Assembly (NCBI RefSeq): GCF_000143415.4
Contig: NW_003314312.1
Coordinates: forward strand, 1,377,713 to 1,441,712
Source of the DNA: Selaginella moellendorffii
Taxonomy: Eukaryota; Plantae; Lycopodiophyta
Direction of reading: 5' to 3'
Length of the DNA stretch: 64,000 bases
Every line of letters begins with the position of its first letter. Position 1 is the first letter of the stretch. The translations under genes and the position numbers were made by a program. Below, piece by piece: positions 3,543 through 63,299 of this stretch. The notes beneath the pieces were generated by a model, which did not search any database, was not told the origin of the DNA, and saw nothing but the letters and a program-made list of their open reading frames with translations.

Positions 3543-3775
3543 TGTTATGATCCAGCACAAAAAGACAGAAATCTAATTGCCCTAGACTATGCTACGCCAC
3601 CTCTTGAGGTTCCTCACCACCCAACCACCCCCAAGCTACCTCAAAAGTTCCATTGCGCCGCCGTTCCACTATGAACCCTAGGGTAGGTTAAGTCCCTTAC
3701 CCTAACATGCTTTAATATACCCTTGAGCCTCCCTTTGACCGATGTTGACCACGTAGTCAAAGCTGGCACCTAACA
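3543..3775 (-). repeat. 3' LTR of gypsy element
   Basis: TGTTATGATCCAG...GGCACCTAACA, a direct repeat of 8208-8420. Confidence 0.92.
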
Positions 3776-6700: not shown

Positions 6701-8207
6701 CCACACATCTTTAACGCCACCATACTCCAGCGAGATACGCTTAATACTCCACTTTATCTCTGGATCCACCTTCACCAACCATGGCATCCCAAGAATGAGA
6801 TCCACACGATGAATATCCACGAGATAAAAAGTCTCCACAAGTGTGGTTTTGCTAACCAACACTTCCAGCCCCTCGACACAAGCATCGAAATGTTAAGTAG
6901 AGATGGCTGCACCTTCCATTGTGTATGGAAGAACTCCACGTGTGACCAGGCCATGCTCCGCAACAAACTTTGCCGAAACAAAGTTGTCATCACTCCCACT
7001 ATCCAGTAAAATCCGCACTGGATCGCCACAGAACACGCCCTCCAGCATTAAAGCTGATTCATGCATATCCTCAAGCTCCATTTTGTTCCACACACAATTG
7101 AGTTGACGAGCAACGATTGAAAGTCGCTTCCTCCGACCGGAATGGTCATTCTCCTCATCCTCACGCTGCAAAGTTTGCAACTTTTTAGTATCTGACTTAC
7201 TGTGAGAAGAAGATTGGCCATTCTTCTTATCCTGCTGCTTGTTCTTCAACTGCGGACAATCAGCCTTGTAGTGTCCAAGTTCGCCACAATGATGACAACC
7301 TTGTCTATAATTCTTCACAAAGAACTTCTACTTCTTGGACCCCTTTGCATCTGAAGTAGTCACCACCGACTTCAATTTGTGATGCTTGTTCCCATCCTTG
7401 TGTCCATGGCGATTATCACGACGATTCTCGATAGAAGGACTCCGCGAACGCTTGCAAGACTTGTGCTTATCATTGTCAAGTCGACGAGCTGCATCAAAGA
7501 GCTCCTCCAAACTCTTTGTAGGCTGAGAATGACGCAAGTGTTGCCGCATGCTCTCACTATGTAGGCCATCAATGAAGTAGGACTTGTTCTGATCCAGATC
7601 CTTCGTTGGAACACGACTAATCAAGCGAGTAAGCTTCTCAATATAGTCCCCGAGTGTCATTTTCCCTTGCTGGAAATGTCGAAGTTCTGTACGAGCATTC
7701 TCCACGTCGTGATGAGGGGCAAAATGTAAACAGAAAGCAGCCTCAAACTCATCCCTGGTGGTTTCTTATCCGCAACACGGGACTCCTCAAGCCTATTCCA
7801 CCATCGAAGACCCGCATCACGCAAAACCATCAAAATAGCCACTAAAGCCTCTGCATCTGGAGTTCCTCTAGCAGCCAAGAACTTCTTCATATTGGCTAGC
7901 CAAGCAAGACATTCGTCCACACCACCATCACTGGAAAAAGTTGGAATTTTGAGTCGATCTACCAAAGAAGGCTTACTTGGAGCGCTACCCCGTCCAGCCT
8001 CGAGTGCCTCAACATGCCTATGCATGGTATCCATCATGCCATGCATCTCGTCTTGCATCTCTTGCTGATTGCGATTAAGGGCTTGCAGTTCATGAACCAC
8101 ATCTTGAATGGTCCAAATCTCCACAGCTTCGTCAGCACTATCGTCGGCACCACCATCGACAATAGGATTCCAGCGTTCAGCTTGGTCGGTCATCGCAACC
8201 AACTTAA

Positions 8208-8420: not shown

Positions 8421-8799
8421 ATATGGAACTTCCCCAATGCCCTACAATCCTTCTTCTTCCAAGCAGCTTTCTCTTCATCTATGGCTTCTTCCCTGTTGTC
8501 ATCATCCATAGACCATGCTCGTCCATGTACAATTTGAAATTTGGTATTCCAGGTATCTTCCCATTGAATTTAGGTGGAGCGGCATCCACTGCCACGTGAC
8601 ATCGACTGAATTGGAAGCCAATGCAGCCCCACCAGTCTGCCCAATTGTCCCAAATGCTATCAAGTCTCCAAGGATTGCTCAGATCCCTTTCCCATTCACT
8701 CTACCTCATACTCATGGGCGAAGAAGAGCTCTGTATACTATGAGACCTAGGATCCTACATGGTGCTGATGTGGAGAGAAAGGATTCACTACAAGCCATA

Positions 8800-8962
8800 G
8801 TCTCCAAGGAGGATGTAGCAAATATCTGATCTTGCAACAACACCTCTTTGGCAAGAAGTGAGCTTGAGATGACAACCGCTGGCACAGTTCCCAGTTTCAT
8901 GAAGAGATTTGGTCCAAACTGCTTGGATAGGGCATGCAATGAGAGGAAGGGAATTCCTGCGA
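8800..8962 (-). pseudogene. P450 N-terminal fragment
   Basis: GIPFLSLHALSKQFGPNLFMKLGTVPAVVISSSLLAKEVL in ORF 8712-9146; there is no downstream P450 sequence. Confidence 0.7.
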
Positions 8963-9223
8963 TTGTGAATGTCGAATTTGTGAAGATTTGAGAAGCAAAT
9001 AGCCCTTGGCATTTATATGCTTGCTTCTTTGAGACTTGTTTGAGAATTCTAGTCAACCACAACTTTGACGAGCAACACACTTGAATTGACTTGATCTTGA
9101 TGCAACAATCTTTCAAGTCACTAAAGATGGACTCATTGACTCCCAATGAAAAACGTTGCTGGTTGTTGATTCTGTTGTTTCAGTGAAAGACGGCCAAGCT
9201 TGACAAGCAAAATAAAAGTTTAA

Positions 9224-10767
9224 TTATATAGGTTTTGGGAGTCTTGAAGAAACAACAACCTCAAGTGGTGTTTCCAACCAGAGAACAGTCCCACTTTGTT
9301 CCTTGAGCTCGTAACAATCCATGCCTTTGCCAGGAACAAAGCTCCAGTCGAAAGAGTGAATCAAGTTAAACAATAGCAATTGAGCAGTCTTCAATCCCAG
9401 TGACATCCCCGGACACATTCTTCGGCCCGCACCAAATGGAAGCAGCTCAAAGTCCTGGCCTTTTACGTCGATCGAGTTCCCAAGGAACCTTTCCGGCTTG
9501 AATTGCAATGCATCCTCCCATACTGCCGGATCTCTTCCAATTGCATAACCATTGACAAATGTGGAAGTTCCTTTGGGAATGTCATAGCCAGCAACCTTGC
9601 ACGCTTCGGTTGACATGTGAATCAGCAGCGGAGCTGGAGGATGAATGCGGAACGCTTCCTTGACAATTGCCTGAAGGTACTCCAGTTTGTCAAAGTCGCT
9701 CTCCGCAACAAGGCGTTCCTTTCCGACAACGGTGTCAATCTCTTCCTGGGCCTTTTGAAGAATAAGTGGATTGTGCATGAGTTCCAACAGCGTCCATTCA
9801 ATCAAACTAGCGCTGGTATCTCCTCCAGATAAAAGCTCCTGCATGATTCGAGATTAGCCAACATTACTAGCGTTGACTTTGTTACCGTGACAATAGCTTT
9901 GACCGATTCCTCTCCCCGGGCTCCTTCGCTTTTCAAGCTTTGCAGCATGATATCCATGAAATCTATGGGCTGCGAGGTCTCGGACTCGAGCCTAGCCTTG
10001 TGATCGTCTAAAATTCTCTGCAAGAACTTGTCTTGTCTCGCATGTATCCTCTTCATCTCTGGGATCTTCCAGTCAATCCGTCTCATGAACGCCGGTACGA
10101 ACTCACTGATGTGGAATTGAAGCATCTGCTCGGTGATTTCAAACACAATGTGCTTGAAATCCTCGGCCTCACTGCTCATCTTAGCCTCATGCTCACCATA
10201 CTCGAAGAAACGCTTGCTCATCAGGATCTGCATGACAACATTGAAGACATATGTTGTCAGGAGGTGCCTCATGTTGATTGGCTTCTGATAGTCAGCCGCA
10301 TTCACAAGCTCAGACAAGACGCCACGCATTTCTCTCGTTCGCACCCCTTGAAACGATTCAATGCGCTTGACAGTAAAGAGCTCTGTAGCGCAAAGCTTCC
10401 TCATTCTTTTCCAGTAGTCGCCATATGGAACAAAACCAATGTCTCGGAAGTTGTAGAAGTTGTACTCCCCCATGATCAAGTATGGCCTCGAGGCAAAATT
10501 TGCATCCTGGATCTTTAGTACCTCTTTCGCTAGCTCCGGACTGGAGATCACCACAGCTGGTACCATTCCCAGGCGTAAAAACACAATCGGTCCATACTTT
10601 GTGGAGAGTGCCTGGAATGAAAGGTGTAGCATTCTTCCCAAGAGATGCAAGTGACCGATAAGAGGCAGCCCCCATGGAGATGGAGGCAAATTAAGCCGAC
10701 GCTTGAAAGATAGCACCAAGAAGAGAAGAGTGATCAACAAAACAACTGCGTATTGAGCAAACTCCAT
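9224..10767 (-). CDS. Cytochrome P450, CYP71 clan (type A), two exons (10767-9886, 9838-9224), about 498 aa, apparently intact
   Basis: Membrane anchor, PPSPWGLPLIGHLHLL, KEAFR (ExxR), PERF and heme motif FGAGRRMCPG. A 47-bp phase-0 GT-AG intron lies before the I-helix. Confidence 0.92.
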
Positions 10768-11430
10768 TACTGATTCAAAGTATCAAACGTGACAGCCTGA
10801 AAGAAGGATGGATCGATGATCTATCGATATAAACATTGGTTGCATCTAACAGTCCATGTGAGTGGCTTTGACTTGATATTTCAACACGTATGTTCTTATT
10901 TTCTTTCTAAACTATTCTGTGCTTAAAACTTAGTGGTCCAAGTTTGACAATTATTAATCAAGATATTTTATGGAGCCGGCAATGTAGAAAAGCAACTTAT
11001 ATCGGTCTCATGCTTGTAAACAATATATGAATGAAGGAATATGTTGAAATGTTCAAGTGTAGTCAGTCTCTTGGAAGACTTGGATTCTAAGGTTCTAGTC
11101 TAAGACTGAGCATAGAATACCGCTGCCATACCCAAGCACCCCACTTCCATATGTGCACCGCGTGAGGAATGACTCGGCTGGGCGAACTACATACATGACA
11201 AAGTGTTCGGTGATCCCGAATTGCGTCAAAAAATTTAACACTCAAGCATTCTCGTGGCTGTTCAAGCATTCTCGTGGCTGTAGTAGTTTGCAAGAATTAA
11301 AATGCCAAATAGCCATGCATATGAAACATTGATTTTCACTTCGTCCGTAGCTAGTTTACATGCGACGCAGCGAACTGCATAGTAAAGGCCACACTACTAA
11401 GAGAAAAATATATGGAAGTACATCAATTTT

Positions 11431-12262
11431 CATATCAGGTTTAATAAATTTTGGATCTGGTTGAGTTTGTTTGAACTTGCCACCACATTTTTTCGGGCCC
11501 AACACGATGATGGTGCGCTTTGGATCCAGAATCCAAGTCCCACGAAACGTGCCTCCACCCAGTAGGGGGTTATCCATGCCATGGTAGCGGCTTCTCGCAT
11601 AGTGGAACACCAGATTCGCTGGGATTGCGCAGGAGAGAACATCCAGGAACTTCAGGAAATCTTTCTTCCCATTCCGGGACGCATTCGCGGCAAAGATATC
11701 GCGGTAAAAGATGAATTCGTCTTCCTTGTCCTGGATCATCCTCCACGTAGTGTTCACGGGGTCCTGAAACGTCTGCACGCTCGGATCGGTGAGCAGCAGC
11801 ACCGCGAAGATTGTTAAACTTATTCTTGTAAAACTCCCTGAGAAACGAGAAGACGTCGTTCACCATCCACATATGATCGAGCATAGCGTTCTGAGCACTG
11901 ATGTAATCCAGGGATTCAACATCCTCATCGTCAAACAAAGCACCCATTACGTAGATGAGTAAGACGTTCTTCCTCCGGTACCTAGAGCTTGTAGTCCTGC
12001 GTCAAGTCGTCACTCAAGATGCTTCTTGCCCAGCCCTCAACAGTGGAAACCGTGAGCTTGAACAGCTCCGGCTTCAACAGAGACCTCAAATCCTTCATCA
12101 GATCGTGGCAGGCTCGATATCCGGCACTTCCGCAAGCGATGCGGTTCCATAGCAGAGGCTATGAACAGTGTCGATATACGATGACGCGAGAGCTCCCCCA
12201 GCAACCTCGTTGTCATCAAATGGATCGTCCAGGAAAGCAGTGAGCCAGGCAAACTTCGCCTG
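11431..12262 (-). pseudogene. Microbial terpene synthase-like (MTPSL) pseudogene, 5'-truncated and frameshifted
   Basis: FLDDPFDDNE and NDVFSFLRE motifs are split over ORFs 12037-12252, 11570-11947 and 11356-11802. Paralogue of 40357-41467. Confidence 0.88.
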
Positions 12263-12363
12263 CTTCGCTTCGAATAACTATTGATGGTTCAAGCCTTGAG
12301 ACTGGTTGTTGCTCAGCGGTTTATAAAATGATATCAATGTGGCGTAATTCCTAATCAATCGAC

Positions 12364-13924
12364 ATGGAGTTTCGATTGCTCTTGTGTTCTTCATCTATGT
12401 TCTTGTATGGGGAATTCCAGGTGGAGGGCACCGCCGTCTCAACTTGCCAGTATCACTCAGTAGGTCTCTTCCATTGATCGGACACCTCCACCTCTTTGGG
12501 AGGAAACCCCATCTCTCTCTCCTTACACTGTCCAACAAGTATGGACCGATCTTCTCTCTCCGGCTGGGAATGGTGCCATCCGTGGTGGTCGCGAGCGCCC
12601 ATCTGGCCAAGGAGCTCTTCAAAGCCCAGGACGTTACATTCTCTTCCAGGCCGTATTTCATGCCAGGGGAGTATAGCTTCTACAACTTCCTTGACATGGG
12701 ATTTGCGCCTTACGGCGATTACTGGAAGAACATACGGAAGCTGTGTGCCACGGAGCTCTTCACAATCAGGCGCATCGATTCTTTCTTGTGGGTACGAACA
12801 GAGGAGCTCCATGAGATGCTATCGGCGCTCTTGGATTCTTCTCTCGATTGCAAGCCCGTCAACATGAGAGACATGGTCACGACATGCCTGTTCAATGTAA
12901 TCACGCGGATCCTGATGAGCAAGAGGTTCTACACGTTTGTGGGAGATGAGGCAACCATGGATGACGATGCCCGGGAGTTTAAGAGCCTCCTGCTGTCCAT
13001 CACAGACCAGGCGCTCGATTTTCACATCAGCGAGTTTGTCCCGCCGTGGCTCAGAGGCATCGACTGGAAGATCCCGCGGCTCAAGAAGCTGCAGGCAAAG
13101 ATTGATAGTTTCTTGCAGAAGATAGTCGACGAGCACAAGCTTGGTGTCGATAGCGGCAAGGAGGACTTCATGCACATCATGCTCGAGTACCTCAAGGATG
13201 AACCATATTGCGAGGACAGTGTCAAGGCCAATAGCATGGTAAGTTCTTCCTCTCGTGATTTGACGTCTCTTAACTATATCCTCGAATGTGCCAGGAGCTT
13301 ATATGTGGAACAGACACAAGTGCCGCCGTGATCGAGTGGGCGATCCTGGAGCTTCTTCACCACCCGGAGATGCTACGAAAAGCTCAAGAGGAGATGGACG
13401 TGGTGGTGGGGAATTCTCACCTGGTCGGAGAAGCCGACATTGCGCAGCTCCAGTATATGCAAGCAGTGATCAAGGAAACCTTCCGCTTCCATCCTCCAAT
13501 TCCTCTTCTGCCTCGCATGGCATCTCACGACTGCAAGCTGGGAGGATTTGATGTTCCAAAGGGCGCAACCACGTTCGTGCACGTCTACGCCATTGGAAGG
13601 GATCCAGCCGTGTGGGACGAACCATTGAAGTTCATGCCGGAGAGGTTCTTGGGGAATTCCTTGGATGTCAAGGGCCAGGACTATGAGCTGCTTCCATTTG
13701 GCTCTGGTCGCAGGGGTTGTCCGGGGATGATACTGGGATTACGAACGGTGCAGCTGCTGGTATCCAACTTGATTCACAGCTTCGATTGGAGCTTTGCGGG
13801 GGAGAGGGGAGGAGAAGCATTTCCTCTGGAAGAACGAGACTCTGCTGGGACTGTTATTTGGACCAAGACTCCGCTCCAAGTCGTGGCCACTCCAAGACTT
13901 AGGAAGGAGGTACTGCTAGGCTGA
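12364..13924 (+). pseudogene. Cytochrome P450, CYP71 clan (type B); body open but ATG out of frame
   Basis: Intron 13239-13294; KETFR, PERF and FGSGRRGCPG present. ATG 12364 is out of frame with the body. Comparison with the paralogue start near 40107 (ATGGGGTTTCTAGCATGCGCGATTGCT) indicates a 10-bp deletion after codon 3. Confidence 0.75.
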
Positions 13925-14817
13925 TTGAGATTTCATGAAATGGGCTTGCAAATATCTCCTCGTTATTTAAAAATTTCTTTTCATAAACTGTTTATACATG
14001 GTCTCGTGTCTCCAAGAAGCATGAAACCAAAAGGTATAATAAGTATACTGTATTGATGAGTGAGGCTGCAACAGAACTCCTCCCAATCGTCTCTACTGTG
14101 GTTGTGGTCGCCCTGCTTCATTGCCAAGTAAACTGACCATTGAATGTACAAGGTAAGAGTGGGAAGTTTCTTTGTACAGCTTTTCTCCGAGAAAATGTTT
14201 CAAACTGAAAGAGCCAATGAAATAAAAAAGTTTTAAATGAAAGGTCAAAAATAAACGCAAGCCATCAGCTACAATTCCACAGTTCTCAACCAACTTCATA
14301 TCCTTGGCATAAGGGGTTGTTAAGTGCCAACTTTAACTCTGTCAACATGAGTCAAAAGGAAAGGTTAACCTACGTAAGGGCTCATAATGAAGCAGTGGCA
14401 CAGTGGGAAGTAGGAGGAATTTCAAGAGGAATTATAGCATAATTTAGAAAGATTAACTTTTTATTATTTAACGTTGGATTTTAACATTTGTATTTGAAAT
14501 GGATGCAGTTTTTAAGGTGTAGCAAATATTTCCTTAAGGCAAGGAGAGTCCCCATAATCGTGAATGTCGAATTTGTGAAGATTTGAGAAGCAAATAGCCC
14601 TTGGCATTTATATGCTTGCTTCTTTGAGACTTGTTTGAGAATTCTAGTCAACCACAACTTTGACGAGCAACACACTTGAATTGACTTGATCTTGATGCAA
14701 CAATCTTTCAAGTCACTATAGATGGACTCATTGACTCCCAACGAAAAACTGCTGGTTGTTATTTCTGTTGTTTTCAGTGAAAGACGGCCAAGCTTGACAA
14801 GCAAAATAAAAGTTTAA

Positions 14818-16193
14818 TTATATAGGTTTTGGGAGTCTTGAAGAAACAACTACCTCAAGTGGTGTTTCCAACCAGAGAACAGTCCCACTTTGTTCCTTGA
14901 GCTCGTAACAATCCATGCCTTTGCCAGGAACAAAGCTCCAGTCGAAAGAGTGAATCAAGTTAAACAATAGCAATTGAGCAGTCTTCGACATCCCCAGACA
15001 CATTCTTTGGCCCAGCCTAAAGTCCTGGCTTTTTATGTCAATCAAGTTCCCAAGGAACCTTTCCGGCTTGAATCGCAATGCATCCATACTGCTGGATCTC
15101 TTCCAATTGTATAACAATTGACAAATGTGGGAGTTTCTTTGGGAATGTCATAGCCAGCAACCTTGCACGCTTCGGTTGACATGTGAATCAGCAGCGGAGC
15201 TGGACCTTGACGATTGCCCAAGGTACTCCAGTTTCTCTCAGCAACAAGGCGTTCCTTTCCGACGACAGTGTCAATCTCTTCCTGGGCCTTTGAAGAACAA
15301 GTGGATTGTGCATGAGTTCCAACAGCGTCCTTTCGATCAAACTAGCGCTGGTATCTCTTCCAGATAAAAGCTCCTGCATAATTCGAGATTAGCCAACTGA
15401 CTTTGTTGACAATAGCTTTGACCGAATCCTCTCCTCGGGCTCCTTCGCTTTTCAAGCTTTGCAGCATGGTCTGCGAGGTCTTGGACTCGAGCCTAGCCTT
15501 GTGATCGTCTATAATTCTCTTAAAGAACTTGTCTTGTCTCGCATGTATCCTCATCATCTCTGGGATCTTCCAGTCAATCCGTCTCATGAACGCCAGTACG
15601 AACTCACTGATGTGGAATTGAAGCATCCGCTCCGTGATCTCAAACACAATGTGCTTGAAATCCTTGCCTCGCTGCTCATCTCAGCCATACTCGAAGAAAC
15701 GCTTACTCATCAGGATCTGCATGACAACATTGAAGACATATGTTGTCAGGAGGTGCTCATGTTGATTGGCTTCTGAAAGTTAGCCGCATTCACAAGCTCA
15801 GGCAAGACGCCACGCATTTCTCTCGTTCGCACCCCTTGAAACGATTCAATGCGCTTGACAGTAAAGAGCTCTGTAGCGCAAAGCTTCCTCATTCTTTTCC
15901 AGTAGTCGCCATACGGAACAAAACCAATGTCTCGGAAGTTGTAGAAGTTGTACTCCCCCATGATCAAGTATGGCCTCGATGCAAAATTTGCATCCTGGAT
16001 CTTTAGTACCTCTTTCGCGAGCTCCGAACTGGAGATCACCACTCCTAGGCGTAAAAACATAATCGGTCCATACTTTGTAGATGCATGTGACCAATAAGAG
16101 GCAGCCCCTGGAGGCAAATTAACGACGCTTGAAAGATAGCACCAAGAAGAGAAGAGTGATCAACAGAACAACTGCATATTGAGCAACCTCCAT
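14818..16193 (-). pseudogene. P450 type A pseudogene (direct duplicate of 9224-10767)
   Basis: Near-identical nucleotide blocks with many small deletions. The heme-motif region is partly deleted (QDFRLGQRMCLG). Confidence 0.9.
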
Positions 16194-17139
16194 TTCTGAT
16201 TGAAAGTGTCAAACGTGACAGCCTGAAGGAAGGATGAATTGATGATCTATCCATAAAGCTGTGGTTGCATCTAACAGTACATGTCAGTGGCTTTCACTTG
16301 ATATTTTAAGACGTATGTTCTACTGAACTATTCACTTACAATGGATGGTCCGCTTAAAACTTGGTGGTCCAAGTGTGACGGTTTTATGCAATTATTGGTC
16401 AAGATATTTTATGGAGCCTAGAATAGCAACTTATATGTTGAAAGTCGAAATGTAATTTTCATAAACATCCCATAGTCTCATGTTGACCTCACAAAGACAA
16501 TGTAGATTATAATTATGTCTTAGTTTTTATTATATTCTTATTTTCTTCAAAGGCTGCCTGTTACAATTTGATTGACATACCACTGAGCTAAAAATATTAA
16601 ATATTCTGACTAGACTAAGAAGTTTTCTTGTCTTCCAGGACAGGACACCTGTGAAACATGCTGGTGTGTAATCTTGAAAATTTAATGGCTTAAGACAATG
16701 TTAGTGATCAGAACATTCACTTCAAGAAGGAAACGTAAAATTTTTTTATTCAACAAAGTTTGGTCCACATTAATTAAACCGAAGCAAGCATATAATTGCC
16801 AAGGGCTATTTGCTTCTCAAATTTTAGACATTCACGATTATGGGGTCTTACTTGCTCTTGTCTATGCCTTAAGGATATATTTCCTGCGCCTTAAGCCGCC
16901 TACATGGATTGCCCCTCCCTGGACACCTCCGTCATCTCGCAGGAATTCCCTTCCTCTCACAGGGTTACAAGGTTCTCCAGCTGTCCTATTTGAGGAGGAA
17001 TCGGTCCGGTGAGTTTGTTGCCATGCAAGTCCCTGCCAGAGAAGAACGCAAGAACTCAGTAAACGAAAACCAACACACACCAACCCACAGTTTCCTGAGA
17101 TCCAGGAAATGATCGGGAACGTTCCAATGATCGACACTT

Positions 17140-17488
17140 GAAAGAGCTCCCTGGAAAGAAAGAAGAAAGTGACGATCAAAGTGATAAGAGGTATTAAAAC
17201 TCACAATTCCGTGGCCATCGGCATTTGGGGAGGAACAAGTGATTCCCGGCCACAATGCCGCGTCTCCATCCCCATAGGGATCCTCCCCATTCCAGCATAC
17301 ATAACCTTCCATCCTCCAGCTGCCTTGAGCTCGTTCAATGCCTTGACTGGAATTGGCAAGATCGTCGCTTAATCCCTGTCTAAATCGAAAATGCAGGTGG
17401 AGAGGATCGACTCACCGTCTCGCTTCACCGTCTTGGCAGCTGCTAGAGTGGCAATTCAGAGCCCAAGAACGAAACCAAGGAGCCCCAT
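17140..17488 (-). pseudogene. N-terminal fragment of a plant extracellular LRR protein (signal peptide plus LRRNT cap)
   Basis: AKTVKRD / intron / VKALNELK..GW...NGEDPYGDGDAALWPGITCS, with a stop and a frameshift; no LRRs follow. Confidence 0.6.
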
Positions 17489-17581
17489 CTCAAGAACCCT
17501 AGATTTTCATTTTTGAATCAATGAATCGGTACTGTAACATTTCAACATTTGTATGGAATCGCTATGTTTTTCACTGGATTC

Positions 17582-19258
17582 TCAGTTGAATTCGCTACCC
17601 ACGCAGTGATGGCACGTAAAGAGATTGATAGGATCGACCCTGCGCTTGATGTGGTACAGGCGAGGATAGTTCTTCCCAAAGAAGGATTGTTGCCAATTGG
17701 GCTCGTTGTAATCGGCCTCGTTCACGTAAGTCCCGGAGCCCGGCGTGAGATCGATGAAGAGCTTGTTCGCCTGCGACACTAGATTCGCAGCAGCCCTCAT
17801 CTCCGCCACCGTCGCATTGTCCCGCCAAGTCAGGGGCGATACGAGCAGCCACAGTCCGTCGCGATACGCCGGATTCACAGCGCTGTCTTGGGGTTCTCGC
17901 ACTTTTCCGCCCCCCAGGATCGCATATGTAGCTGGAACTTGCAGCTCGGTCATGACGCGCATCATGGCCTTTGGGAGGAGGTCTTGTTCGTGGTTGAAGA
18001 GCGATCTCGGGATCAGCCTCGTTGCGAAGACATCCGAGACTCCCAAGTTGTTGAGGCCCAAGCACGATTCCTGCCCTCCACATTGAAACTGCAAGTGCCA
18101 GTCCCAGTACGAGGCATACGTCTCCAAGCTCCCGTCGATCCGGATGTTGTTCTCCCGCGCGTACGATAGCAGCGGGGCCAAGGTGGCGGAAGCATACGAG
18201 ACGTTCCGGTTGGGCAGCAGGAACGTTAGCGTCAGGCTCTGGCTTGTCGAGAAGAAGTAGCCAGACCAGCCGGCATCGGACAGAGAGGGATTCAACCTCG
18301 TAAACAGAGTGAGCAGCCCCTGAAAGGTGGTGGTATCGGGGGCGCTGAAGTTGTGAGGAGCGAAGACGAGGGTGTGAAGAGCTGGAAAAGTCCTGTGCGT
18401 CGCCGAGAGCACAACTCCGAATGTTCCTCCGCCGCCACCCCGGAGAGCCCAGAACAAGTCCGTGTTTTGGCATGCATTTGCTTTGACAAGCCTACCATCC
18501 GCGGTCACCACCTCGTACTCGAGAACGTTATCGGCGCTCAAGCCAATTAGCGGGGAAAGGAAACTTTGGCCGCCACCTTGAGGGTATCCGCCGGCTGCTC
18601 CAACCGAGGAACATCCCCCGCCAGCCAGGATCATCTTTCGTTGATACGCTTGCCGATAGAGCTCCTCCCACTGAATTCCAGCTCCCACCGTCACTGCCGA
18701 GTAGCCACGGTCGCTACCACGGCCGCATTTGAAGCTCTCGTGGAACTGGATCTTCTGGAGGTGGTGCACCCAAATGCTGAGAGCTCCCACCGCCGTGCTC
18801 CGCCCGAGGAAGTCATGCCCCGTGTTTCGTATCACGATGCGCAAGTCGTGCCGGGACGCAAACTTGACGGCCTCTTGGACGTGGGCCGCCCGAGTAACGT
18901 TGACCGCGTAGATCGGGACCGCGCCCTGGAAGCAAGCGGCGGTCCTGTTGGAGGAGATCAGGCAGCGCTGCTCCCCAAACGATTCCCAGCTCGTCCGTTG
19001 CAATGCACCCGGTTGATCGGTCCTCCAGAACGGACTGTTCCAGCCGCTCCTCACGGCGTTGCAGGCTCGCTCGTCGTAGTTTGGATCATGGCATGGCGAT
19101 GCTGGAGGGGCCACGCTGATCATTCTCCCTCCCACGGAGCGATTGAAGGATGCCCAGGTCTGTGCGTCTGGCCAGCACAGCTCGCCCGCTATACACTTGG
19201 AGTGGACATGGCCGGGAGCAAATAGAACGACCAAGAATATCGATAGTATCGCTATCAT
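17582..19258 (-). CDS. Secreted FAD-linked oxidoreductase (VAO/PCMH, BBE-like; fungal isoamyl-alcohol-oxidase type), 558 aa, intronless
   Basis: Signal peptide; C....CWP...W...N.SVGGR; RNTGHDFLGRS (covalent-FAD His); DLFWALRGGGGGTFGVV; C-terminal BBE domain YVNEAD...NYPRL..IK..VDP. Confidence 0.92.
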   Translation of the reverse strand: MIAILSIFLVVLFAPGHVHSKCIAGELCWPDAQTWASFNRSVGGRMISVAPPASPCHDPNYDERACNAVRSGWNSPFWRTDQPGALQRTSWESFGEQRCLISSNRTAACFQGAVPIYAVNVTRAAHVQEAVKFASRHDLRIVIRNTGHDFLGRSTAVGALSIWVHHLQKIQFHESFKCGRGSDRGYSAVTVGAGIQWEELYRQAYQRKMILAGGGCSSVGAAGGYPQGGGQSFLSPLIGLSADNVLEYEVVTADGRLVKANACQNTDLFWALRGGGGGTFGVVLSATHRTFPALHTLVFAPHNFSAPDTTTFQGLLTLFTRLNPSLSDAGWSGYFFSTSQSLTLTFLLPNRNVSYASATLAPLLSYARENNIRIDGSLETYASYWDWHLQFQCGGQESCLGLNNLGVSDVFATRLIPRSLFNHEQDLLPKAMMRVMTELQVPATYAILGGGKVREPQDSAVNPAYRDGLWLLVSPLTWRDNATVAEMRAAANLVSQANKLFIDLTPGSGTYVNEADYNEPNWQQSFFGKNYPRLYHIKRRVDPINLFTCHHCVGSEFN

Positions 19259-19705
19259 CCTTGAAGAACCTTTACAGGGCTGAGAGAAAGAGAGCTATGC
19301 TTTCTTTTGCTGATCGATCTCGAGATGTAGCTTTGTCAATGACTTTGGCACTGCAAGCAACCATTTATATATCACTTGGAAGCCGCGGTTTTCATTCGCT
19401 CGCTGGGTTTGACATTGACATGTTCTTTAGAGGCTGAAAATTCGAGCAATGGCGCCCAGGCGACTTTTCACACGCTGAGATATCAAAGTCATGCATGGAC
19501 ATTATGTACGTCAGTCGACGTGTTGTTTGAGCAATGAACAAGGCCAAGATAACAACCACCATTCCAAATTGACCGAATCTTTCAGAATCTTCTCTAAGCG
19601 CTTTCGTGGATGTCACATTTGCGCGTCGGTCAAGCTGGCCAGGAATGTATTTAAGCAGCCGTCTCGGGATCAAAGTCACAAGTCTTTGCAAGCAATCCAG
19701 GAATC

Positions 19706-21102
19706 ATGGGCGTGATAAGCTACTTCACCGGATACCGCGGCGCTACAGGCTTTGGATCGGGAGCTACAGCCGAGAAAGTTGCAAAGGGGATTTCTCTGGA
19801 ATCCAAAGTGGTAATCGTCACAGGTATGCCGATTCCATCGATAGTTTGCTTCGATTTCTCATCATCAAGCTACAGGGGCTACCTCCGGAATTGGGTTTGA
19901 GACTGCCAGAGTTCTCGCCAAGCACGGTGCGCACGTTGTTATCCCAGCCAGGAAGCTACAGAACGCTGAAGCAGCCAAGTCCAAGATCCAACGCGAATTC
20001 CCTAATGCAAGGGTCACTGTTCTTGAGCTGGATCTGAGCTCCCTCAAGTCGGTCAGGAAATTTGTCGACGACTTCAAGGCTCTAAATCTCCCGCTCCACA
20101 TCCTCATGTGAGTCACTCCTGTTAGTGTTTCTGATCAAAATGCATGGATCAATGCAGAAACAATGCTGGGATGACGGCCAATAACTTCCAGCTCTCACCG
20201 GATGGCTTGGAGCTCGATTTCGCGACAAACCATATGGGTATGGTGTTCAAGTTTTGTCTGTTAGAAAAACCTTCACGCTTTGGATGATGATCCAGGTCCG
20301 TTTTTGCTCACTGAGCTGCTGTTGGACAAGATGATCCAGACTGCATCTCAAACTGGAGTGCAAGGTCGGATTGTCATGGTGGCGTCTGAAGGTCACAGAT
20401 ATGTTCCAAAAGGCGGGATTGAGTTTGACAAGCTGAATGATAAGAACAGGTCAGTTTTTTCATTGACAAGTAGGAGGAAGCATTTCGGTTTTCCTTGCAA
20501 TCTTTCCAATGAACTTTCTTTAACTCTCGTCGTACAGCTTCCAATGGATTACTAGCTACGGAAGATCCAAACTGGCCAACATACTGCATACCAGGGAGTT
20601 AGCAAGCCGCTTGAAGGTGTCCATAGATTCAAAGTTTTTGTGCTCGAGTTTTCCCAGACATAATTTTGATGATCTTCCATTTCAGGAGAAGGGTGCCAAC
20701 GTGCTTGTAAATTCACTTCATCCTGGAACTATCAAGACGAACCTTGGAAGAGATTTCAACCAGACTTCAGCTAGTAAGTTCATGAAACAGTATCTGAAAA
20801 GAATTGAGATTGATCAACTTGTGCTGCTGTGCAGAGCTGCTTCTCTTCCTCGCGAGCCCACTTTGCAAATCCATCCCGCAGGTACAAACATATCATAGCC
20901 TACGTTTCTGGATTAAAGCTGTGATTTCTTTCAGGGCGCTGCTACAACCATGCTTCTTGCGGTCCATCCTTGCATGGAGGGCGTGAGTGGAAAGTACTAC
21001 TTGGATTGCAACGAAGCGGATTGCACCCCTCATGCCAAGGACATGAAGTTGGCTGCAGAGCTGTGGACTTTTAGTGAGGAGTTTATCAAGTCTCATCCTT
21101 GA
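19706..21102 (+). CDS. Short-chain dehydrogenase/reductase, Tic32/retinol-dehydrogenase-like, 8 exons, apparently intact
   Basis: Spliced reading gives [31 protein letters not shown] (YxxxK), LHPG, GAAT, GKYY. First intron 19824-19875; stop at 21100-21102. Confidence 0.88.
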
Positions 21103-21543
21103 GTTACATTAATTTTCTTTCAAAGTTTTGGCCAGGAGCTTTTATTTTCAATTTGAAACATTTTTCAAAGAAAAGCTAAACTTCCTTCTACATCAGTTTA
21201 CTCTGAGTTTGGACCATTTTGACGGCAAACCAGTAAAGTGAACGGGCCAAGCGTGGCAATGAAGCAGGGTGATGACAACGACGGTAGAGACGTAGTTCTG
21301 TTGCGCCTCACTCATCAGGCATGCTTATTATACCTTTTGGATTCATGCTTCTTAAACACCATTTCATGGAATCTCCGTACTTATGGTTTATCAATCAGCC
21401 TAAGAGTACCTCCTTCGGAGTGACCATGACTTAATGCTTCTCCGAAACGCCACGAGCAGCTTTGCCCACAGTGTAGCCGCGTGTGCACTTTCCCCGCGTC
21501 TCACTCCCGTCAATAAAATTTCTGTTTCTAGTGCTAACTTTAG

Positions 21544-24500
21544 ATGGCATCTTCTTCCGCTGCTGTAACCCCTGGCTACTACACAAATTCACAGGAGAAA
21601 ACTTCGCAACCTGGAGAACAAAGGTCCAGCTCATCTTGATGGCAAACGATTGCTGGACAATCGTGGACGGCACCGAAGCTGAACCAGCTGAGCCCGCTCT
21701 CCAGCCAGTGTGGAAAGCCAAGAATAGAAGAGCCCGCTCTGTCATTGGCTTAGGACTCGGCGACGAGTTCATCCATCTGCTGGATCTCTCGAAGACCGCT
21801 CACGAGAATTGGTAGTCCTTGGTGAAGGTGTTTGCTGCGAAAGCAGCAAATGCCAAGATCGTCCTTAACCCAGAAGTTCCTTTCTCTCCGGATGCAGCCA
21901 ACAGACACGATGGCATCGTACATTGGCAAGCTTAGGGGGATGATGCAAGAGCTTAAGGAGGCTGGCGCGCCTGTCTCGGACGATTATGCCAAAGCTTTCC
22001 TTCTCTATTCGGTTTCTTCTGAACTCCAACCGTCTTCCTCTATGTTCTCCTTCGTTCCAGGAAAGACCCTAGACGAGCTCTATTCCAATCTCTTGGAAGA
22101 AGAGCGCAAGCTTCTGGAGCGAAAATCAGGCACGACCTCCGCAGATTCTGCTCGTGATCAGGCTTTGTTCATTGGCAAGAAGTCAGGAAATGGAAATGCC
22201 AAGAAGCGTGGGAATTCTCGCGGATTTGCCTCCATCACAAATGGAAACAAGAAAAAGAAGGGGCCGTGTACCTTCTGCGGGAAGATGGGGCACATAGAGC
22301 GAGAATGTGGAGCTAAGAAAGCAAACACCCAACGGATGCTGACTCAAACAGACGTTGCTGATGGCCGTGGCCTCGTCACTGGTGTCTGGTTTAGACGTCC
22401 TCTGGTTGGACAGTGGTGCTTCTTACCACATGACTCCTCTTCGTACAGCATTCCACACTTTCCACGAATTGCTTTCCCCAAAACAAGTCTTTGTTGGAGA
22501 CAAGCGACTTCTCGACGTTGAAGGCCGTGGCATGGTGCAAGTCAAGTTGCCCAATGGATCTCTCAAGGAAAATCCATAACATGTGCCCGGTGCAGGCCAG
22601 ACTGTCCTTTCGGTTGGCGTCGCCTCCGATCAAGGGTTCTCGCTCACATTCTTTGCAGAAGGATGTACTATTTTTGGAGCAGATGGCAGTGAGGTACGAT
22701 ACACTCTATCGCCTCAACGCAGAGCTTGTTTATCCAGGGACATACATGCTAGCGCTTCGAGGCCAAGAGACAATTCATCTTTGGCATGCTCGTCTCGGGC
22801 ATGTAAATGAGAAGGATCTCCAGAACCTTGCTCGCAGCAAGCTAACAAATCCGAAGTTTTTTAAAACTTCAAAATTTTCAAAAGCTGGGCAGAAAATTTT
22901 ACAGGAAGAAAAATCAGTGTGCTACGCACAGATGGAGGAGGAGAATACATTGCACAAGGATTTCTCCAATTCCTAGCTGAGGCAGGAATTCCTCATCAGT
23001 ACACGGCTGCTTATACACCACAGCAGAATGGTGTGGCTGAGAGGTTTAATCGGACGCTCTTGGATATGGTGCGTTGCCTTCTTCTGCATTCCGGACTGCC
23101 ACACAGCTTCTGGGGAGAAGCAGTGAACACGACGGTGTACTTGCGTAACCGTTTGCCCACCCGGAGCACAGGCTTGATCCCGCATCACGTTTGGACTGGG
23201 AAACGTCCAAATTGAGGGCACATCCGGATCTTTGGGTGCAGTGCGTACGCCCGCATCCCTAATCCGAACAGGCGCAAGCTCGACCCACGCAGCACGAAGA
23301 CCATCTTCGTGGGCTAAGGCCTACCGGCTCTACAATCCGTAGTGAGCTGCGACGTGATTTTCAACGAGCAAGAGCTGTATCGCCTCGAAGGTACTTCAAG
23401 CCATTCAACTGATCTTGTGGATCTTTCTTTGGTTCTGGATGAGGTGCTTCCTCTTTCGCTCCCAGCTCCAGAGAATTTTCCTCCAGGAGGAGCTAACAAC
23501 CAAGGCCCACAAGATCCTGGCCGAGCAGTGCCCTTGGTGGCTGGAGGTGGGATCTCCTCCTCACACGCCACTTCTTGCACCTTCTACTGCTTCCACCAGC
23601 AGTCCCACTTCTTCAGCTGAGCCCTCGCTTGTTGCCATCGTCGACGACATTTTAGGCGATGAAATATTTCATCAAGCATCCACCCAGGCCGTTGACCCCG
23701 TGATGACTCCTCCACCTCCACAGGTCTTTGGTCCACGACGCTCTGGACGTGTAACCAAGCCTTCAGTCAAAGTGCTTGAGGCCATTGCCCAGGAACCACG
23801 ACAGAAAGGATTCTACTGGGCAATGCAAGGCCTTCCTGAGCCTTAAGGATATATGGACGCTCTTGCCAGTCCTGACGCCCAAAAGTGGCAAGATGTGATG
23901 CAAGATGAGTATTCTTCTTTGCTTAAAAATGACACTTGGACTCTCATGCCATTGCCACCAGGAAGGAAAGTTGTGAGCTCCAAGTGGCTCTTTAAAGAAG
24001 AGCAAGGAAGTACAAGGCGGATGGGAGTGTGGAGCGATTCAAAGCCAGATTTGTCGCTTGTGGCTTCTCGCACATTCAGGGAGTTGACTATTCTGACACT
24101 TACAGTCGGGTAGTTAAGCTAACCACCATCCGCTTGCTTCTGGTTTTAACAGCCGAGCTTGATCTTGAGCTCTATCAACTCGATGTGCGCACAGCATTCC
24201 TCAATGGTGATCTTGAGGAGGAGGTGTATGTGGCACAGCCTCAAGGTTTTGTCCTTCCAGGCCAAGAACACCTCGTATATGCATAAAGCTCTCTATAGGC
24301 TTAAACAAAGCCCCAGGTCTTGGTATAACAAGATTAATGGTTTTCTAATTACTCTTGGCTTCATACGCAGCTCAGCCGATGGTAATCTCTACATCTACTT
24401 TGAAGGCGAAGGATTTCTCTTCCTAGCGCTTTATGTGGACGATACCATCCTCGCTTCTAACCAAGTCCGGCTTATTCACAAGATTAAGACATATCTCTCT

Positions 24501-25436
24501 GCAAAATTCGAGATGGCGGACCTTGGTGAGCTGCATTACTGCCTTGGAATCCAAGTACGACGCAACAAGAGACATGGGATTCTCGAGCTCTCTCAAGAAA
24601 AATACATCCTGGATGTACTTCAGAGGTACTCTATGCTCCATGCTAATCCTGTGGCCACTCCTATGCCCGCAGGCCTTAAGCTTTCTAAAGCTTCTACATC
24701 CGAGACATATCGCACTGCCGGGAGGAGAAAAGCGCCAGAACTCTCTACCGTTCGATGGTCGGCATGTGATTTCAACAAGGCCGGATTTAGCCTACCCGGT
24801 AGGCTGCGTGGCAAAGTACTTGGAAAATCCATCGCAAGAACTGCTGTTAAGAGAATCCTGCGGTACGTTGCTGGAACTAAGCACTACTCTCTTCAGTTCT
24901 CCAGACGAGAGAGCTCCACAACGAGCTTGGTTGGCTTCTCTGATGCCGACTGGGCGGGAGACATAGATGACAGGAGATCAACGACAGGCTACGTCTTCCT
25001 CCTGAATGGGAACGTGGTGAGCTGGTGCTCAAAGAAGTAGGTTATCACAGCCATGTCCTCAACGGAATCAGAATACGTAGCAGCAGCAGCAGCAGTAGCA
25101 AAAGAAGCAGTGTGGCTGAGCAAGCTGCTTGAAGACTTGCGAATCCGAGTCCCTCCCATCAAGCTTTGGTGTGACAATCAGTCTGCCATTGCTCTCACAA
25201 GGAACTCTCAATTCCATTCAAGAACGAAGCACATTGAACTGAGGTTCCATTCCATCAGGGAACTCATCAACAAAGGCAAAATTCTTCTGGAAATTTGTCC
25301 TACCAACACAATGCTGGTGGAGGTCCTGACCAAGGCTCTACCTTGTGTACAGCATCAAGTCGTCCTAAAGACACTCAAGCTAGGTGACAGAAACCTTGAG
25401 GAGGAGTGTCAGGAAGCACAACGTCCATGTCACTAG
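21544..25436 (+). mobile_element. Ty1/copia retrotransposon, degenerate gag-pol
   Basis: KFTGENFATW, CCHC knuckle, WLDSGASYHM, LWHARLGH, LRTDGGGEY/PQQNGVAER, YVDD and DADWAGD in copia order. PPT near 25396-25406. Many frameshifts; no matching LTR pair recognised. Confidence 0.92.
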
Positions 25437-36600: not shown

Positions 36601-37020
36601 CCTCTTTGTTATAGCCATCATTACTAACACCATACTCCTTATTAAGATTTATATCCTATATTTAAACCAAGCCATAAAATATTCTTGGAATATTCCTATA
36701 GTTCAGATGCGAGGATGGAGGCAAAAGGTTTCCTTGATCACTACTTGCACATAATGGAGCTGCACAATGTTGTCTTCTCCAACCAGGCAAGAATTCCCCA
36801 TCTCTTCTTGAGCTTTTCCTAGCATCTCCGGGTGGTGAAGGAGCTCCAGGATTGACCACTTGATCACAGCAGCACTTGTGTCTGTTCCACCAGATATAAG
36901 CTCCTGGCATATATAGTTAAGAGACATCAAATCACGAGAGGAAGAACTTACCATGCTATTGGCCTTGACACTGTCCTCGCAATATGGTTCACATCAGCGA
37001 GTTTGTCCCACCGTGGCTCA

Positions 37021-44309: not shown

Positions 44310-44402
44310 CTCATGAACCCTAGCTTTTCATTTTTGAATCAATGAATCGCTACTGTAACATTTCAACATTTGTATGGAATCGCTATGTTTTTCACTGGAT
44401 TC

Positions 44403-46059: not shown

Positions 46060-46169
46060 CCTTAAAGAACCTTTACAGGGTTGAGAGAAACAGTGCTATG
46101 CTTTCTTTTGCTGATTGATCTTGAGATGTAACTTTCTCATTGACTTTGTCAATGACTTAATTAAACATG

Positions 46170-63277: not shown

Positions 63278-63299
63278 TGTCGTGGTTAAGGAGGAGCCC

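What the first reader, a model, noticed from the sequence alone, without database searches (positions are those of the whole stretch)
9224..21102. Candidate terpenoid biosynthetic gene cluster built from microbial-type and plant enzymes
Within 12 kb are an MTPSL, two different CYP71-clan P450s (one head-to-head with the MTPSL), a fungal-type FAD oxidase and an SDR. Scaffold enzyme + P450 + SDR/oxidase is the established logic of angiosperm terpenoid clusters, but those use canonical plant TPS. A cluster around an MTPSL with a second microbial-type enzyme would be notable. Here only P450-A, the FAD oxidase and the SDR look intact, so the cluster may be decaying or functional in another haplotype or locus.
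Basis: partly seen in the sequence, partly recalled or inferred. Interest (0 to 1): 0.8.

Follow-up and report, generated by a model that had tools for sequence, protein, structure and literature searches.

The report
Decayed terpene-synthase/P450 gene cluster copy
In the spikemoss Selaginella moellendorffii, a microbial-type terpene synthase, three kinds of P450, a fungal-type FAD oxidase and a reductase-type gene do sit together, but this copy of the neighbourhood has a dead terpene synthase and is one of several decaying duplicates, so it is at best the relic of a biosynthetic cluster.

Summary
The window is the last 64 kb of S. moellendorffii scaffold GL377616.1. It carries these genes:
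- P450-A, intact, 498 aa.
- A microbial-type terpene synthase (MTPSL) pseudogene. It lacks its first ~86 codons and has four frame-breaking indels.
- P450-B, head-to-head with the MTPSL remnant, killed by a 10-bp deletion after codon 3.
- A heavily broken P450-A copy.
- An intact, intronless, fungal-type BBE/VAO FAD oxidase.
- An intact 8-exon SDR.

The order P450-B(<-)(->)MTPSL(->)P450-A(->)P450-C/D recurs at five places on two scaffolds, including a second unit at window 36.7-46.1 kb. FAD-oxidase copies lie beside three of them.

All three MTPSL copies and three of four oxidase copies examined on this scaffold are pseudogenes. Shared lesions show that dead copies were themselves duplicated. 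Each gene type keeps at least one copy with an intact reading frame somewhere; the one intact MTPSL found is on GL377664.1.

In four RNA runs the SDR is highly expressed and spliced. The oxidase is 20-100 times lower and does not co-vary with it.

Verdict: a relic or candidate cluster, not a working one at this locus. No paper reporting it was found. Interest is moderate.

The parts
3543..8204 (-). LTR retrotransposon (RT, RNase H, integrase, gag-like ORFs) flanking unit 1
   Evidence: Pfam RVT_1, RT_RNaseH, Integrase_H2C2, rve. Copies at 89-94% identity next to paralogous units L004 and L007.
8772..8963 (-). Fragment of a P450 of the C/D lineage (aa ~42-92), downstream of P450-A
   Evidence: tblastn, 84% identity to P0129.
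9224..10767 (-). P450-A: intact CYP71-clan-like P450, 498 aa, one 47-nt intron at 9839-9885
   Evidence: identical to P0128. Hinge PPSP, I-helix GGDTS, ExxR, PERF and the FGAGRRMCPG heme motif are all present. Best PDB relatives are CYP76AH1, CYP93C and CYP73A.
11424..12262 (-). MTPSL pseudogene: 5'-truncated at codon ~86, with four frame-breaking indels. DDxxDD and NSE motifs are still readable.
   Evidence: Alignment A1 and lesion map. The same truncation point occurs in paralogue L007.
12364..13924 (+). P450-B pseudogene, head-to-head with the MTPSL remnant. A 10-bp deletion after 12372 shifts the frame, and the hinge is altered.
   Evidence: 93-97% aa identity to the intact 505-aa P0130.
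14818..16254 (-). P450-A' pseudogene: a copy of P450-A with many indels and its heme-binding loop deleted
   Evidence: Zero RNA depth over 15151-16750 in four runs.
17582..19258 (-). Intact intronless fungal-type BBE/VAO FAD oxidase, 558 aa, with an N-terminal signal-like hydrophobic segment. A His motif (NTGHD) and a Cys motif (GGGCSSVG) resemble the covalent-FAD sites of BBE-like enzymes.
   Evidence: Low RNA depth of 3-12.
19259..19705 (.). 447-bp divergent intergenic region between the oxidase and the SDR. RNA contigs end at 19297 on the oxidase side and start at 19690 on the SDR side.
   Evidence: The pair and this spacer are duplicated in L004.
19706..21102 (+). Intact classical SDR of the POR/TIC32/RDH-like group, 321 aa, 8 exons
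   Evidence: Seven GT-AG junctions in RNA contigs, word depth 170-1450. Model built from those junctions shows TGxxxGxG, NNAG and YxxxK. Pfam adh_short.
21483..25436 (+). Copia-type LTR retrotransposon next to the SDR, partly co-duplicated with the oxidase-SDR pair
   Evidence: Pfam Retrotran_gag_2, rve, RVT_2. L004 5025-6951 matches window 24239-22385.
36706..36990 (-). Unit 2: P450-B fragment (aa ~283-365)
37168..38952 (+). hAT/DUF659-type transposase ORF (594 aa) inserted in the unit-2 P450-B copy
   Evidence: Pfam DUF659.
39521..40106 (-). Unit 2: 5' part of a P450-B copy, head-to-head with the unit-2 MTPSL. Its start codon position is ~251 bp from the MTPSL ATG.
40357..41480 (+). Unit 2: MTPSL with a 5-bp deletion at 41213 (codon ~286), leaving a 322-aa ORF that lacks the last ~86 residues including the RY pair
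   Evidence: Pfam PF19086 on residues 91-275. The same deletion is in L006b.
42060..42456 (+). Unit 2: P450-A fragment (aa 33-166) downstream of the MTPSL
43585..43753 (+). Unit 2: P450-C/D 5' fragment
44380..46080 (-). Unit 2: FAD oxidase pseudogene, 96% nt identical to the intact copy. It has three 1-bp indels and a 21-bp deletion.
   Evidence: NCBI models patch the breaks with introns (P0002).

Best explanation
The 12-kb stretch is one decayed paralogous copy of a gene neighbourhood specific to S. moellendorffii. That neighbourhood was amplified by segmental duplication in a transposon-rich scaffold end.

The repeated core is a microbial-type sesquiterpene-synthase-like gene (MTPSL). A P450 of lineage B is transcribed divergently from ~250 bp upstream of it. 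P450s of lineages A and C/D follow it on the same strand. A divergent pair, a fungal-type secreted FAD oxidase plus an SDR, lies next to this core and was co-amplified.

I infer that the ancestral core was a real two-step unit: a terpene synthase makes the hydrocarbon and the neighbouring P450s oxidise it. After repeated duplication most copies became pseudogenes, and one intact copy of each gene type survives at a different place.

At this locus no terpene scaffold can be made. P450-A, the oxidase and the SDR are live genes that would have to work with a synthase encoded elsewhere, or in other pathways.

Shown: gene content, lesions, the duplication structure, and transcription of the SDR (high) and of the oxidase (low). 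Inferred: that the synthase and the P450s ever shared a pathway, and that the oxidase and SDR belong to it.
For: Identity and position:
- The window is the last 64 kb of GL377616.1 of S. moellendorffii.

The same gene order recurs in five places:
- Unit 1, window 8772-13924.
- Unit 2, window 36706-43753.
- L007, GL377616.1 ~1.33 Mb. This is a 5.6-kb collinear block at 93% identity to unit 1.
- L005 and L006, on GL377664.1.

Lesions:
- The unit-1 MTPSL is truncated and has four frame-breaking indels.
- The unit-2 MTPSL has a 5-bp frameshift.
- P450-B has a 10-bp deletion.
- P450-A copies other than the window's are broken.
- Three of four oxidase copies on this scaffold are broken.

Copies with intact reading frames, all scattered:
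- P450-A, here.
- P450-B, at L007.
- P450-C/D, at L004 and L005.
- MTPSL, 372 aa with DDxxDD, NSE and RY motifs, at L006.
- Oxidase and SDR, here. A second SDR at L004 has near-identical exons and a 323-aa NCBI model.

Other support:
- The three P450 lineages are 53-59% identical to each other and are each other's closest relatives in the genome.
- The oxidase-SDR head-to-head pair is duplicated as an inverted repeat, L004 5025-15276 against window 24239-16959.
- A tight divergent TPS-partner arrangement has precedents: MpMTPSL2-MpCPT5 in Marchantia and a TPS-P450 pair in Dictyostelium (bioRxiv 10.64898/2026.07.16.738752).
Against: - All recurrences trace to duplication of one ancestral arrangement, so they are one observation, not five.
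- Dead copies were duplicated. The 5' truncation is shared by unit 1 and L007. The 5-bp deletion is shared by unit 2 and L006b. The 21-bp deletion plus a 1-bp insertion is shared by two oxidase copies. Amplification was therefore not driven by function.
- The one intact MTPSL found has only broken P450s within 10 kb, so adjacency is not being maintained.
- The oxidase and SDR differ 20-100-fold in RNA contig depth. The run with the most SDR has the least oxidase.
- The SDR is of the POR/TIC32/RDH-like type and is highly expressed, which fits a general-purpose gene.
- Counts of synonymous against non-synonymous singleton changes did not separate the intact oxidase from its pseudogene copies.
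- No product, no co-expression data for the P450s or the MTPSL, and no cross-species synteny are available.
Confidence: 0.5

Rival explanations
1. Chance neighbourhood. Members of large, fast-duplicating families (48 MTPSLs, hundreds of P450s, more than 10 fungal-type oxidases, many SDRs) were thrown together in a TE-rich, recombination-prone scaffold end and copied together. They never shared a pathway.
For: - TE load: LTR elements, Copia, hAT and Mutator-like elements fill much of the window.
- Pseudogenes were duplicated as pseudogenes.
- The intact survivors are not adjacent to one another.
- There is no co-variation of oxidase and SDR RNA.
- Other oxidase paralogues occur at unrelated places, for example next to a GH1 gene in L003.
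- Earlier notes report oxidase arrays elsewhere in the genome.
Against: - The MTPSL is bracketed on both sides, within a few hundred bp, by P450s of one Selaginella-specific subfamily.
- The head position is held by lineage B in most copies but by lineage C/D in L005.
- Each gene type keeps one copy with an intact reading frame, as expected if each is still needed.
Confidence: 0.3
2. A functional but dispersed pathway. The intact survivors still act together to make an oxidised sesquiterpenoid, so the window holds working tailoring genes of a split cluster. The survivors are the MTPSL on GL377664.1, P450-A here, P450-B 43 kb upstream, P450-C/D, the oxidase and the SDR.
For: - At least one copy of each enzyme type has an intact reading frame.
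- The oxidase and SDR are transcribed.
- RNA runs hold about half of the sampled words of 9200-13950. That fits P450-A being transcribed but does not prove it.
- P450-A, the oxidase and the SDR keep all catalytic motifs.
Against: - No co-expression or product data exist.
- Oxidase and SDR levels differ by up to two orders of magnitude.
- The oxidase has a signal-like N-terminus, whereas the MTPSL and the P450 catalytic domains face the cytosol. This follows from general knowledge of these families.
- The L005 MTPSL has substitutions in the Asp-rich motif (NDxxDD) and in the RY pair (CY), so only one clearly competent synthase is known.
Confidence: 0.2

Closest known systems
Angiosperm terpenoid gene clusters built on TPS/CYP pairs (e.g. 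rice momilactone and phytocassane clusters, which also contain an SDR)
   Same: A terpene synthase lies next to CYP71-clan P450s with a dehydrogenase nearby, and the block arose and grew by local duplication.
   Different: - The synthase is a single-domain microbial-type enzyme (PF19086), not a plant TPS.
- A fungal-type BBE/VAO oxidase is included.
- The SDR is of the POR/TIC32/RDH-like type, not the SDR110C type of momilactone A synthase (family assignment from my own knowledge).
- Here the synthase copies in the window are dead, and neither a product nor co-expression is shown.
MpMTPSL2-MpCPT5 mini-cluster of Marchantia polymorpha (bioRxiv 10.64898/2026.07.16.738752)
   Same: An MTPSL is transcribed divergently from a pathway partner across a short shared promoter, 1.5 kb there and ~250-350 bp here. 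Both are in non-seed plants.
   Different: - The partner there is a cis-prenyltransferase that supplies the substrate. Here it is a P450 that would act after the synthase.
- The Marchantia pair is proven by knock-outs, reporters and H3K27me3 data. Here nothing is proven, and the pair in the finding is broken on both sides.
Dictyostelium discoideum terpene synthase-P450 pair with a bidirectional promoter (cited in the same preprint)
   Same: A microbial-type TPS sits head-to-head with a P450 that oxidises its product.
   Different: It is in an amoeba, as a single copy, and is biochemically proven. Here there are multiple decaying copies in a vascular plant, untested.
Marchantia chromosome-6 array of five fungal-type MTPSL genes duplicated with flanking transposon remnants (PMC12890914)
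   Same: An MTPSL family was amplified locally with transposon remnants around each copy, and the region shows structural variation.
   Different: That array contains only MTPSLs. Here P450s, an oxidase and an SDR are co-amplified, and most copies are pseudogenes.
Fungal VAO-type oxidases MtVAO615 and MtVAO713 of Myceliophthora thermophila (PDB 6f72, 6f74)
   Same: They are the best solved relatives of the oxidase over its whole length (E 2e-90 and 1e-73), with the same FAD_binding_4 plus BBE architecture.
   Different: The Selaginella gene belongs to a clade of 10 S. moellendorffii paralogues. That clade groups with fern and moss genes among early-diverging fungi and bdelloid rotifers. It is an old plant resident, not a recent arrival, and its substrate is unknown.

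Membership tests
Plant biosynthetic gene cluster (operational definition) | Three or more non-homologous enzyme classes physically adjacent | tested here: met
   P450, BBE/VAO oxidase, SDR and an MTPSL remnant lie within 12 kb.
Plant biosynthetic gene cluster (operational definition) | An intact scaffold-forming (signature) enzyme in the cluster | tested here: not met
   Both MTPSL copies in the window are pseudogenes. So is the third on the scaffold, in L007.
Plant biosynthetic gene cluster (operational definition) | Co-expression of the member genes | tested here: inconclusive
   Only the oxidase and SDR could be laid on RNA contigs (4 runs). SDR depth was 170-1450 and oxidase depth 3-12, with no parallel change. 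P450-A expression was not resolved. Contig depth is a poor measure of expression.
Plant biosynthetic gene cluster (operational definition) | The genes act in one pathway | not testable with these tools
   This needs enzyme assays or mutants.
Plant biosynthetic gene cluster (operational definition) | Linkage conserved beyond what duplication alone explains (other species or independent loci) | not tested
   No other Selaginella genome was reachable. All five recurrences derive from segmental duplication. Look-ups of distant oxidase paralogue loci failed.
MTPSL (microbial terpene synthase-like, PF19086 single alpha domain) | Terpene_syn_C_2 domain with an Asp-rich motif and an NSE/DTE motif | tested here: met
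   PF19086 hits the unit-2 ORF and the intact L006 paralogue. The unit-1 remnant aligns to them at 84% nt identity and keeps DDPFDD and NDVFSFxxE. Its own ORF pieces give no Pfam hit.
MTPSL (microbial terpene synthase-like, PF19086 single alpha domain) | Complete open reading frame including the C-terminal RY pair | tested here: not met
   Unit 1 lacks codons 1-86 and is frameshifted. Unit 2 loses the last ~86 residues, including the RY pair.
CYP71-clan (A-type) plant P450 | P450 fold with a Pro-rich hinge, I-helix (A/G)Gx(D/E)T(T/S), ExxR, PERF and the FxxGxRxCxG heme loop | tested here: met
   All are present in P450-A. In P450-B the reading frame is broken at codon 4 and the hinge is altered.
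CYP71-clan (A-type) plant P450 | Groups with CYP71-clan families rather than other clans | tested here: inconclusive
   Best solved relatives are CYP76AH1, CYP93C, CYP76AH3 and CYP73A. Database neighbours carry CYP71/75/81/736/750-type names at 30-38% identity. No formal clan phylogeny was made.
BBE-like / VAO-family FAD oxidase of fungal type | FAD_binding_4 plus a C-terminal BBE domain, with His and Cys sites for covalent FAD | tested here: met
   Both domains are found. The NTGHD and GGGCSSVG motifs are read directly from the translation. That they are the covalent-FAD sites is my own reading and was not checked by alignment.
BBE-like / VAO-family FAD oxidase of fungal type | Closer to fungal than to plant BBE-like enzymes | tested here: met
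   PDB: fungal MtVAO615 at 2e-90 against plant BBE-like at 1e-23 or weaker. Database hits outside plants are mostly Mucoromycota and other fungi. In the tree the plant sequences are nested among fungal ones (quick search, midpoint root only).
Classical SDR | TGxxxGxG cofactor motif, NNAG, and the catalytic Ser...YxxxK | tested here: met
   All are present in the 321-aa product built from RNA-confirmed junctions. Pfam adh_short.

The most novel reading that the evidence does not exclude
The intact survivors of the duplicated array still form one pathway. They are the MTPSL at GL377664.1:165312-166430, P450-A, P450-B, P450-C/D, the fungal-type FAD oxidase and the SDR. This would be the first terpenoid pathway in a vascular plant built around a microbial-type terpene synthase with dedicated P450s. 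It would also recruit a second enzyme family of fungal type, caught in the act of cluster break-up after duplication.
Probability: 0.18. Interest if true: 0.7.

Novelty: new variant of a known kind. Interest (0 to 1): 0.4.

Why it matters
How non-seed plants elaborate the products of their microbial-type terpene synthases is almost unknown. In the searchable literature the only MTPSL-based cluster is the Marchantia MTPSL2-CPT5 pair (2026 preprint). No MTPSL-P450 unit has been described in any plant.

The recurrent P450-B(<-)(->)MTPSL(->)P450-A arrangement names specific enzyme combinations to test. It also gives a natural series of copies showing how a plant cluster is amplified and then decays. 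The window's own copy is dead, so the value lies in the lead, not in a working cluster.

Tried and rejected
1. Selection test. I counted synonymous and non-synonymous singleton changes in the intact oxidase and its pseudogene copies. All copies gave about 1:1, so the test separated nothing.

2. Independent linkage test. Look-ups of the genomic context of distant oxidase paralogues (P0005, P0012) and of other proteins (P0021, P0124, P0127) found no record.

3. Allelic copy. Protein searches found no near-identical second copy of the oxidase, the MTPSL or P450-A on another scaffold. The GL377664.1 loci are 82-93% identical, so they are paralogues, not the other haplotype.

4. Co-transfer of the synthase and the oxidase from one fungal cluster. 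I consider this unlikely. The oxidase sits inside a clade of 10 S. moellendorffii paralogues, and the MTPSL belongs to a 48-member family (PMC6779861). Their adjacency is therefore derived, not ancestral.

5. Li et al. 2012 (PMC3437839) could not be read. I could not check whether it mentions neighbouring P450s.

6. RNA for the P450-A/MTPSL/P450-B stretch. Only the share of sampled words is known (up to 0.51). That does not say which gene is transcribed, and the single read-laying run went to the oxidase-SDR stretch.

7. GC content as a sign of foreign origin. The 18-20 kb bin is 55% GC against 43-47% in neighbouring bins. This is not informative by itself.

Full report
**Where the window lies.** The intact FAD-oxidase ORF is a known protein of Selaginella moellendorffii on scaffold GL377616.1 (1,441,712 bp). 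Coordinates of fetched loci place window base 1 at record base 1,377,713. The window is therefore the last 64 kb of that scaffold, in the same orientation.

**What the finding's coordinates contain.**
- P450-A (9224-10767, minus) is intact. One 47-nt GT-AG intron (9839-9885) gives 498 aa, identical to database protein P0128. All P450 signature motifs are present. Its best solved relatives are CYP76AH1, CYP93C, CYP76AH3 and CYP73A, all CYP71-clan enzymes.
- The terpene synthase (about 11424-12262, minus) is a pseudogene. I aligned it to an intact single-exon 372-aa paralogue, L006:7476-8594. It begins only at nt 257. It carries a 10-bp deletion, a 4-bp insertion with a stop, a 9-bp deletion, a 2-bp deletion and a 5-bp deletion. 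The DDPFDD and NDVFSFxxE motifs can still be read.
- P450-B (12364-13924, plus) is head-to-head with the synthase remnant. A 10-bp deletion directly after its third codon shifts the frame relative to the intact 505-aa paralogue P0130. Its Pro-rich hinge is also altered.
- A further copy of P450-A at 14818-16254 is riddled with indels and has lost its heme loop.
- The FAD oxidase (17582-19258, minus) is an unbroken 558-aa ORF with FAD_binding_4 and BBE domains.
- The SDR (19706-21102, plus) has 8 exons and gives 321 aa with all catalytic motifs.

**Microbial type of two enzymes.** Intact relatives of the synthase carry Pfam PF19086 (Terpene_syn_C_2). Their best solved relatives are microbial enzymes.

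The oxidase matches fungal MtVAO615 and MtVAO713 over its full length (E 2e-90 and 1e-73). It matches plant BBE-like proteins only over the FAD domain (1e-23). In a 52-sequence tree, 10 S. moellendorffii paralogues form one clade (support 98). That clade lies with fern and moss sequences among early-diverging fungi and bdelloid rotifers. The oxidase family is therefore fungal in type but old in this lineage. The copy here is a diverged paralogue, at most 56% identical to those on other scaffolds.

The same gene order recurs in five places. Written in the synthase's orientation, the order is P450-B(<-)(->)MTPSL(->)P450-A(->)P450-C/D fragment.
- Unit 1 is the finding itself.
- Unit 2 lies at window 36706-43753. 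Its P450-B copy is split by a hAT/DUF659 transposase.
- L007 lies 43 kb upstream on the same scaffold. It is a 5.6-kb collinear block, 93% identical to window 8962-14446.
- L005 and L006 lie on scaffold GL377664.1.

In unit 2 the P450-B start maps about 251 bp from the MTPSL ATG. In L005 a C/D-type P450 occupies the head position, 353 bp away.

The three P450 lineages are 53-59% identical to each other. They are each other's nearest relatives in the genome.

The oxidase and the SDR form a head-to-head pair 447 bp apart. The pair, together with a piece of an adjacent Copia element, is present a second time just upstream of the window as an inverted repeat. That repeat is L004 5025-15276 against window 24239-16959, at 88-97% identity. 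Further oxidase copies lie next to unit 2 (window 44380-46080) and at L003.

**State of the copies.**
- All three MTPSL copies examined on this scaffold are dead. The unit-2 copy has a 5-bp deletion at codon ~286. That removes the last ~86 residues, including the RY pair that binds diphosphate in class I synthases. The role of the RY pair is established knowledge for bacterial class I terpene synthases, not tested here.
- Of four oxidase copies on this scaffold, only the one in the finding is intact. The others have 1-bp indels, a 13-bp deletion or an LTR insertion.
- Of the P450-A copies, only the window's is intact.
- Copies with intact reading frames exist elsewhere: P450-B at L007, P450-C/D at L004 and L005, and one MTPSL at L006.
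- The L005 MTPSL keeps its reading frame but reads NDPFDD and has lost the RY pair.

**Order of events.** Several lesions are shared between copies. The 5' truncation of the MTPSL is shared by unit 1 and L007. The 5-bp and 3-bp deletions are shared by unit 2 and L006b. A 21-bp deletion plus a 1-bp insertion is shared by two oxidase copies. Copies that were already broken were therefore duplicated again. Amplification here is a property of the region, not a response to selection for the cluster. The window is dense with LTR, Copia, hAT and Mutator-like elements.

**Expression.** RNA runs of the organism hold parts of both stretches queried. I laid contigs of four runs on 15151-21150 at 98% likeness or better.
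- The SDR is spliced at seven GT-AG introns, with word depth 170-1450.
- The oxidase is covered only by short contigs at depth 3-12. Coverage is confined to 17590-19297. Depth is zero over the P450-A' pseudogene and over part of the intergenic spacer, so this is transcription rather than DNA carry-over.
- Part of those oxidase contigs carry bases typical of the paralogous pseudogenes. Others match the window exactly.
- The run with the most SDR has the least oxidase.

This gives no support for co-regulation across the shared spacer. However, four runs and contig depths are weak evidence. Which gene accounts for the RNA words in 9200-13950 could not be resolved.

**Is it more than chance?** A rough estimate uses 48 MTPSLs (PMC6779861) and, from my own knowledge, a few hundred P450 genes in about 212 Mb. 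On those numbers, one MTPSL with a P450 within 2 kb somewhere in the genome is not very improbable. P450s of one subfamily within a few hundred bp on both sides is much less likely. Because every recurrence stems from one ancestral arrangement, the statistics rest on a single event.

Three things speak for a former functional link. The arrangement is a tight divergent one. The flanking P450s belong to one subfamily. One copy of each gene type survives intact.

Three things speak against a link that selection still maintains. The survivors are scattered. The intact MTPSL has only broken P450 neighbours. Pseudogenes were duplicated as pseudogenes.

**Comparison with what is known.** The logic resembles angiosperm TPS/CYP clusters. 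It also resembles the divergent-promoter pairs MpMTPSL2-MpCPT5 (Marchantia) and TPS-P450 (Dictyostelium). It differs in combining a microbial-type synthase with plant P450s, a fungal-type oxidase and a POR/TIC32/RDH-like SDR, and in being largely decayed. Literature searches found no report of an MTPSL-P450 cluster in Selaginella or in any plant. The original MTPSL paper could not be read.

**Verdict.** The finding is a decayed copy within a duplicated array. It is best read as the relic of an MTPSL-P450 unit with co-amplified neighbours (confidence 0.5). The rivals are a chance neighbourhood (0.3) and a still-functional dispersed pathway (0.2). Novelty: a new variant of a known kind. Interest is moderate (0.4). 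The lead worth following is the set of intact paralogues, not this locus.

Noticed in passing
window 16764-17350 (-): A spliced minus-strand transcript lies just downstream of the oxidase. It has a 54-nt intron at 17150-17203 (CT..AC on the plus strand) and word depth up to 76 in run X10. The ORF at 16986-17312 looks to me like the N-terminal cap of an LRR protein, but it has no Pfam hit. The paralogous place in L004 is annotated as a chimeric 'BBE + LRR' gene.
   Followed up: partly
window 63292-63975 and L005 14033-14716 (GL377664.1:2647-3330): A 684-bp stretch is 100% identical between the very end of scaffold GL377616.1 and the start region of GL377664.1, inside a Mutator-like element. It is either a very young transposon copy or a sign that the two scaffold ends are misassembled or adjacent.
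   Followed up: no
window 11581-13924, 39805-42416, 43681-45597; L005 10001-12200: Public gene models here are chimeric. The 551-aa P450-B model starts antisense inside the MTPSL pseudogene. The MTPSL models P0121, P0122 and P0123 borrow P450 fragments as terminal exons. Oxidase pseudogenes are given introns to step over frameshifts (P0002, P0003, P0010). Automated cluster finders run on these models would overcount intact genes.
   Followed up: partly
window 37168-38952 (+): An apparently intact 594-aa hAT/DUF659-type transposase ORF is inserted into the unit-2 copy of P450-B.
   Followed up: no
window 17590-19297; L003, L004: Low-depth RNA contigs carry base variants that match the paralogous oxidase pseudogenes (L003 and L004 copies). 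The broken copies therefore seem to be transcribed at about the same low level as the intact one.
   Followed up: partly
window 17582-19258 and proteins P0038, P0079, P0091, P0107, P0108: In the oxidase tree, bdelloid rotifer sequences form a well-supported clade next to the Mucoromycota/Zoopagomycota fungi. This same oxidase family therefore seems to have entered rotifers as well as non-seed plants.
   Followed up: no
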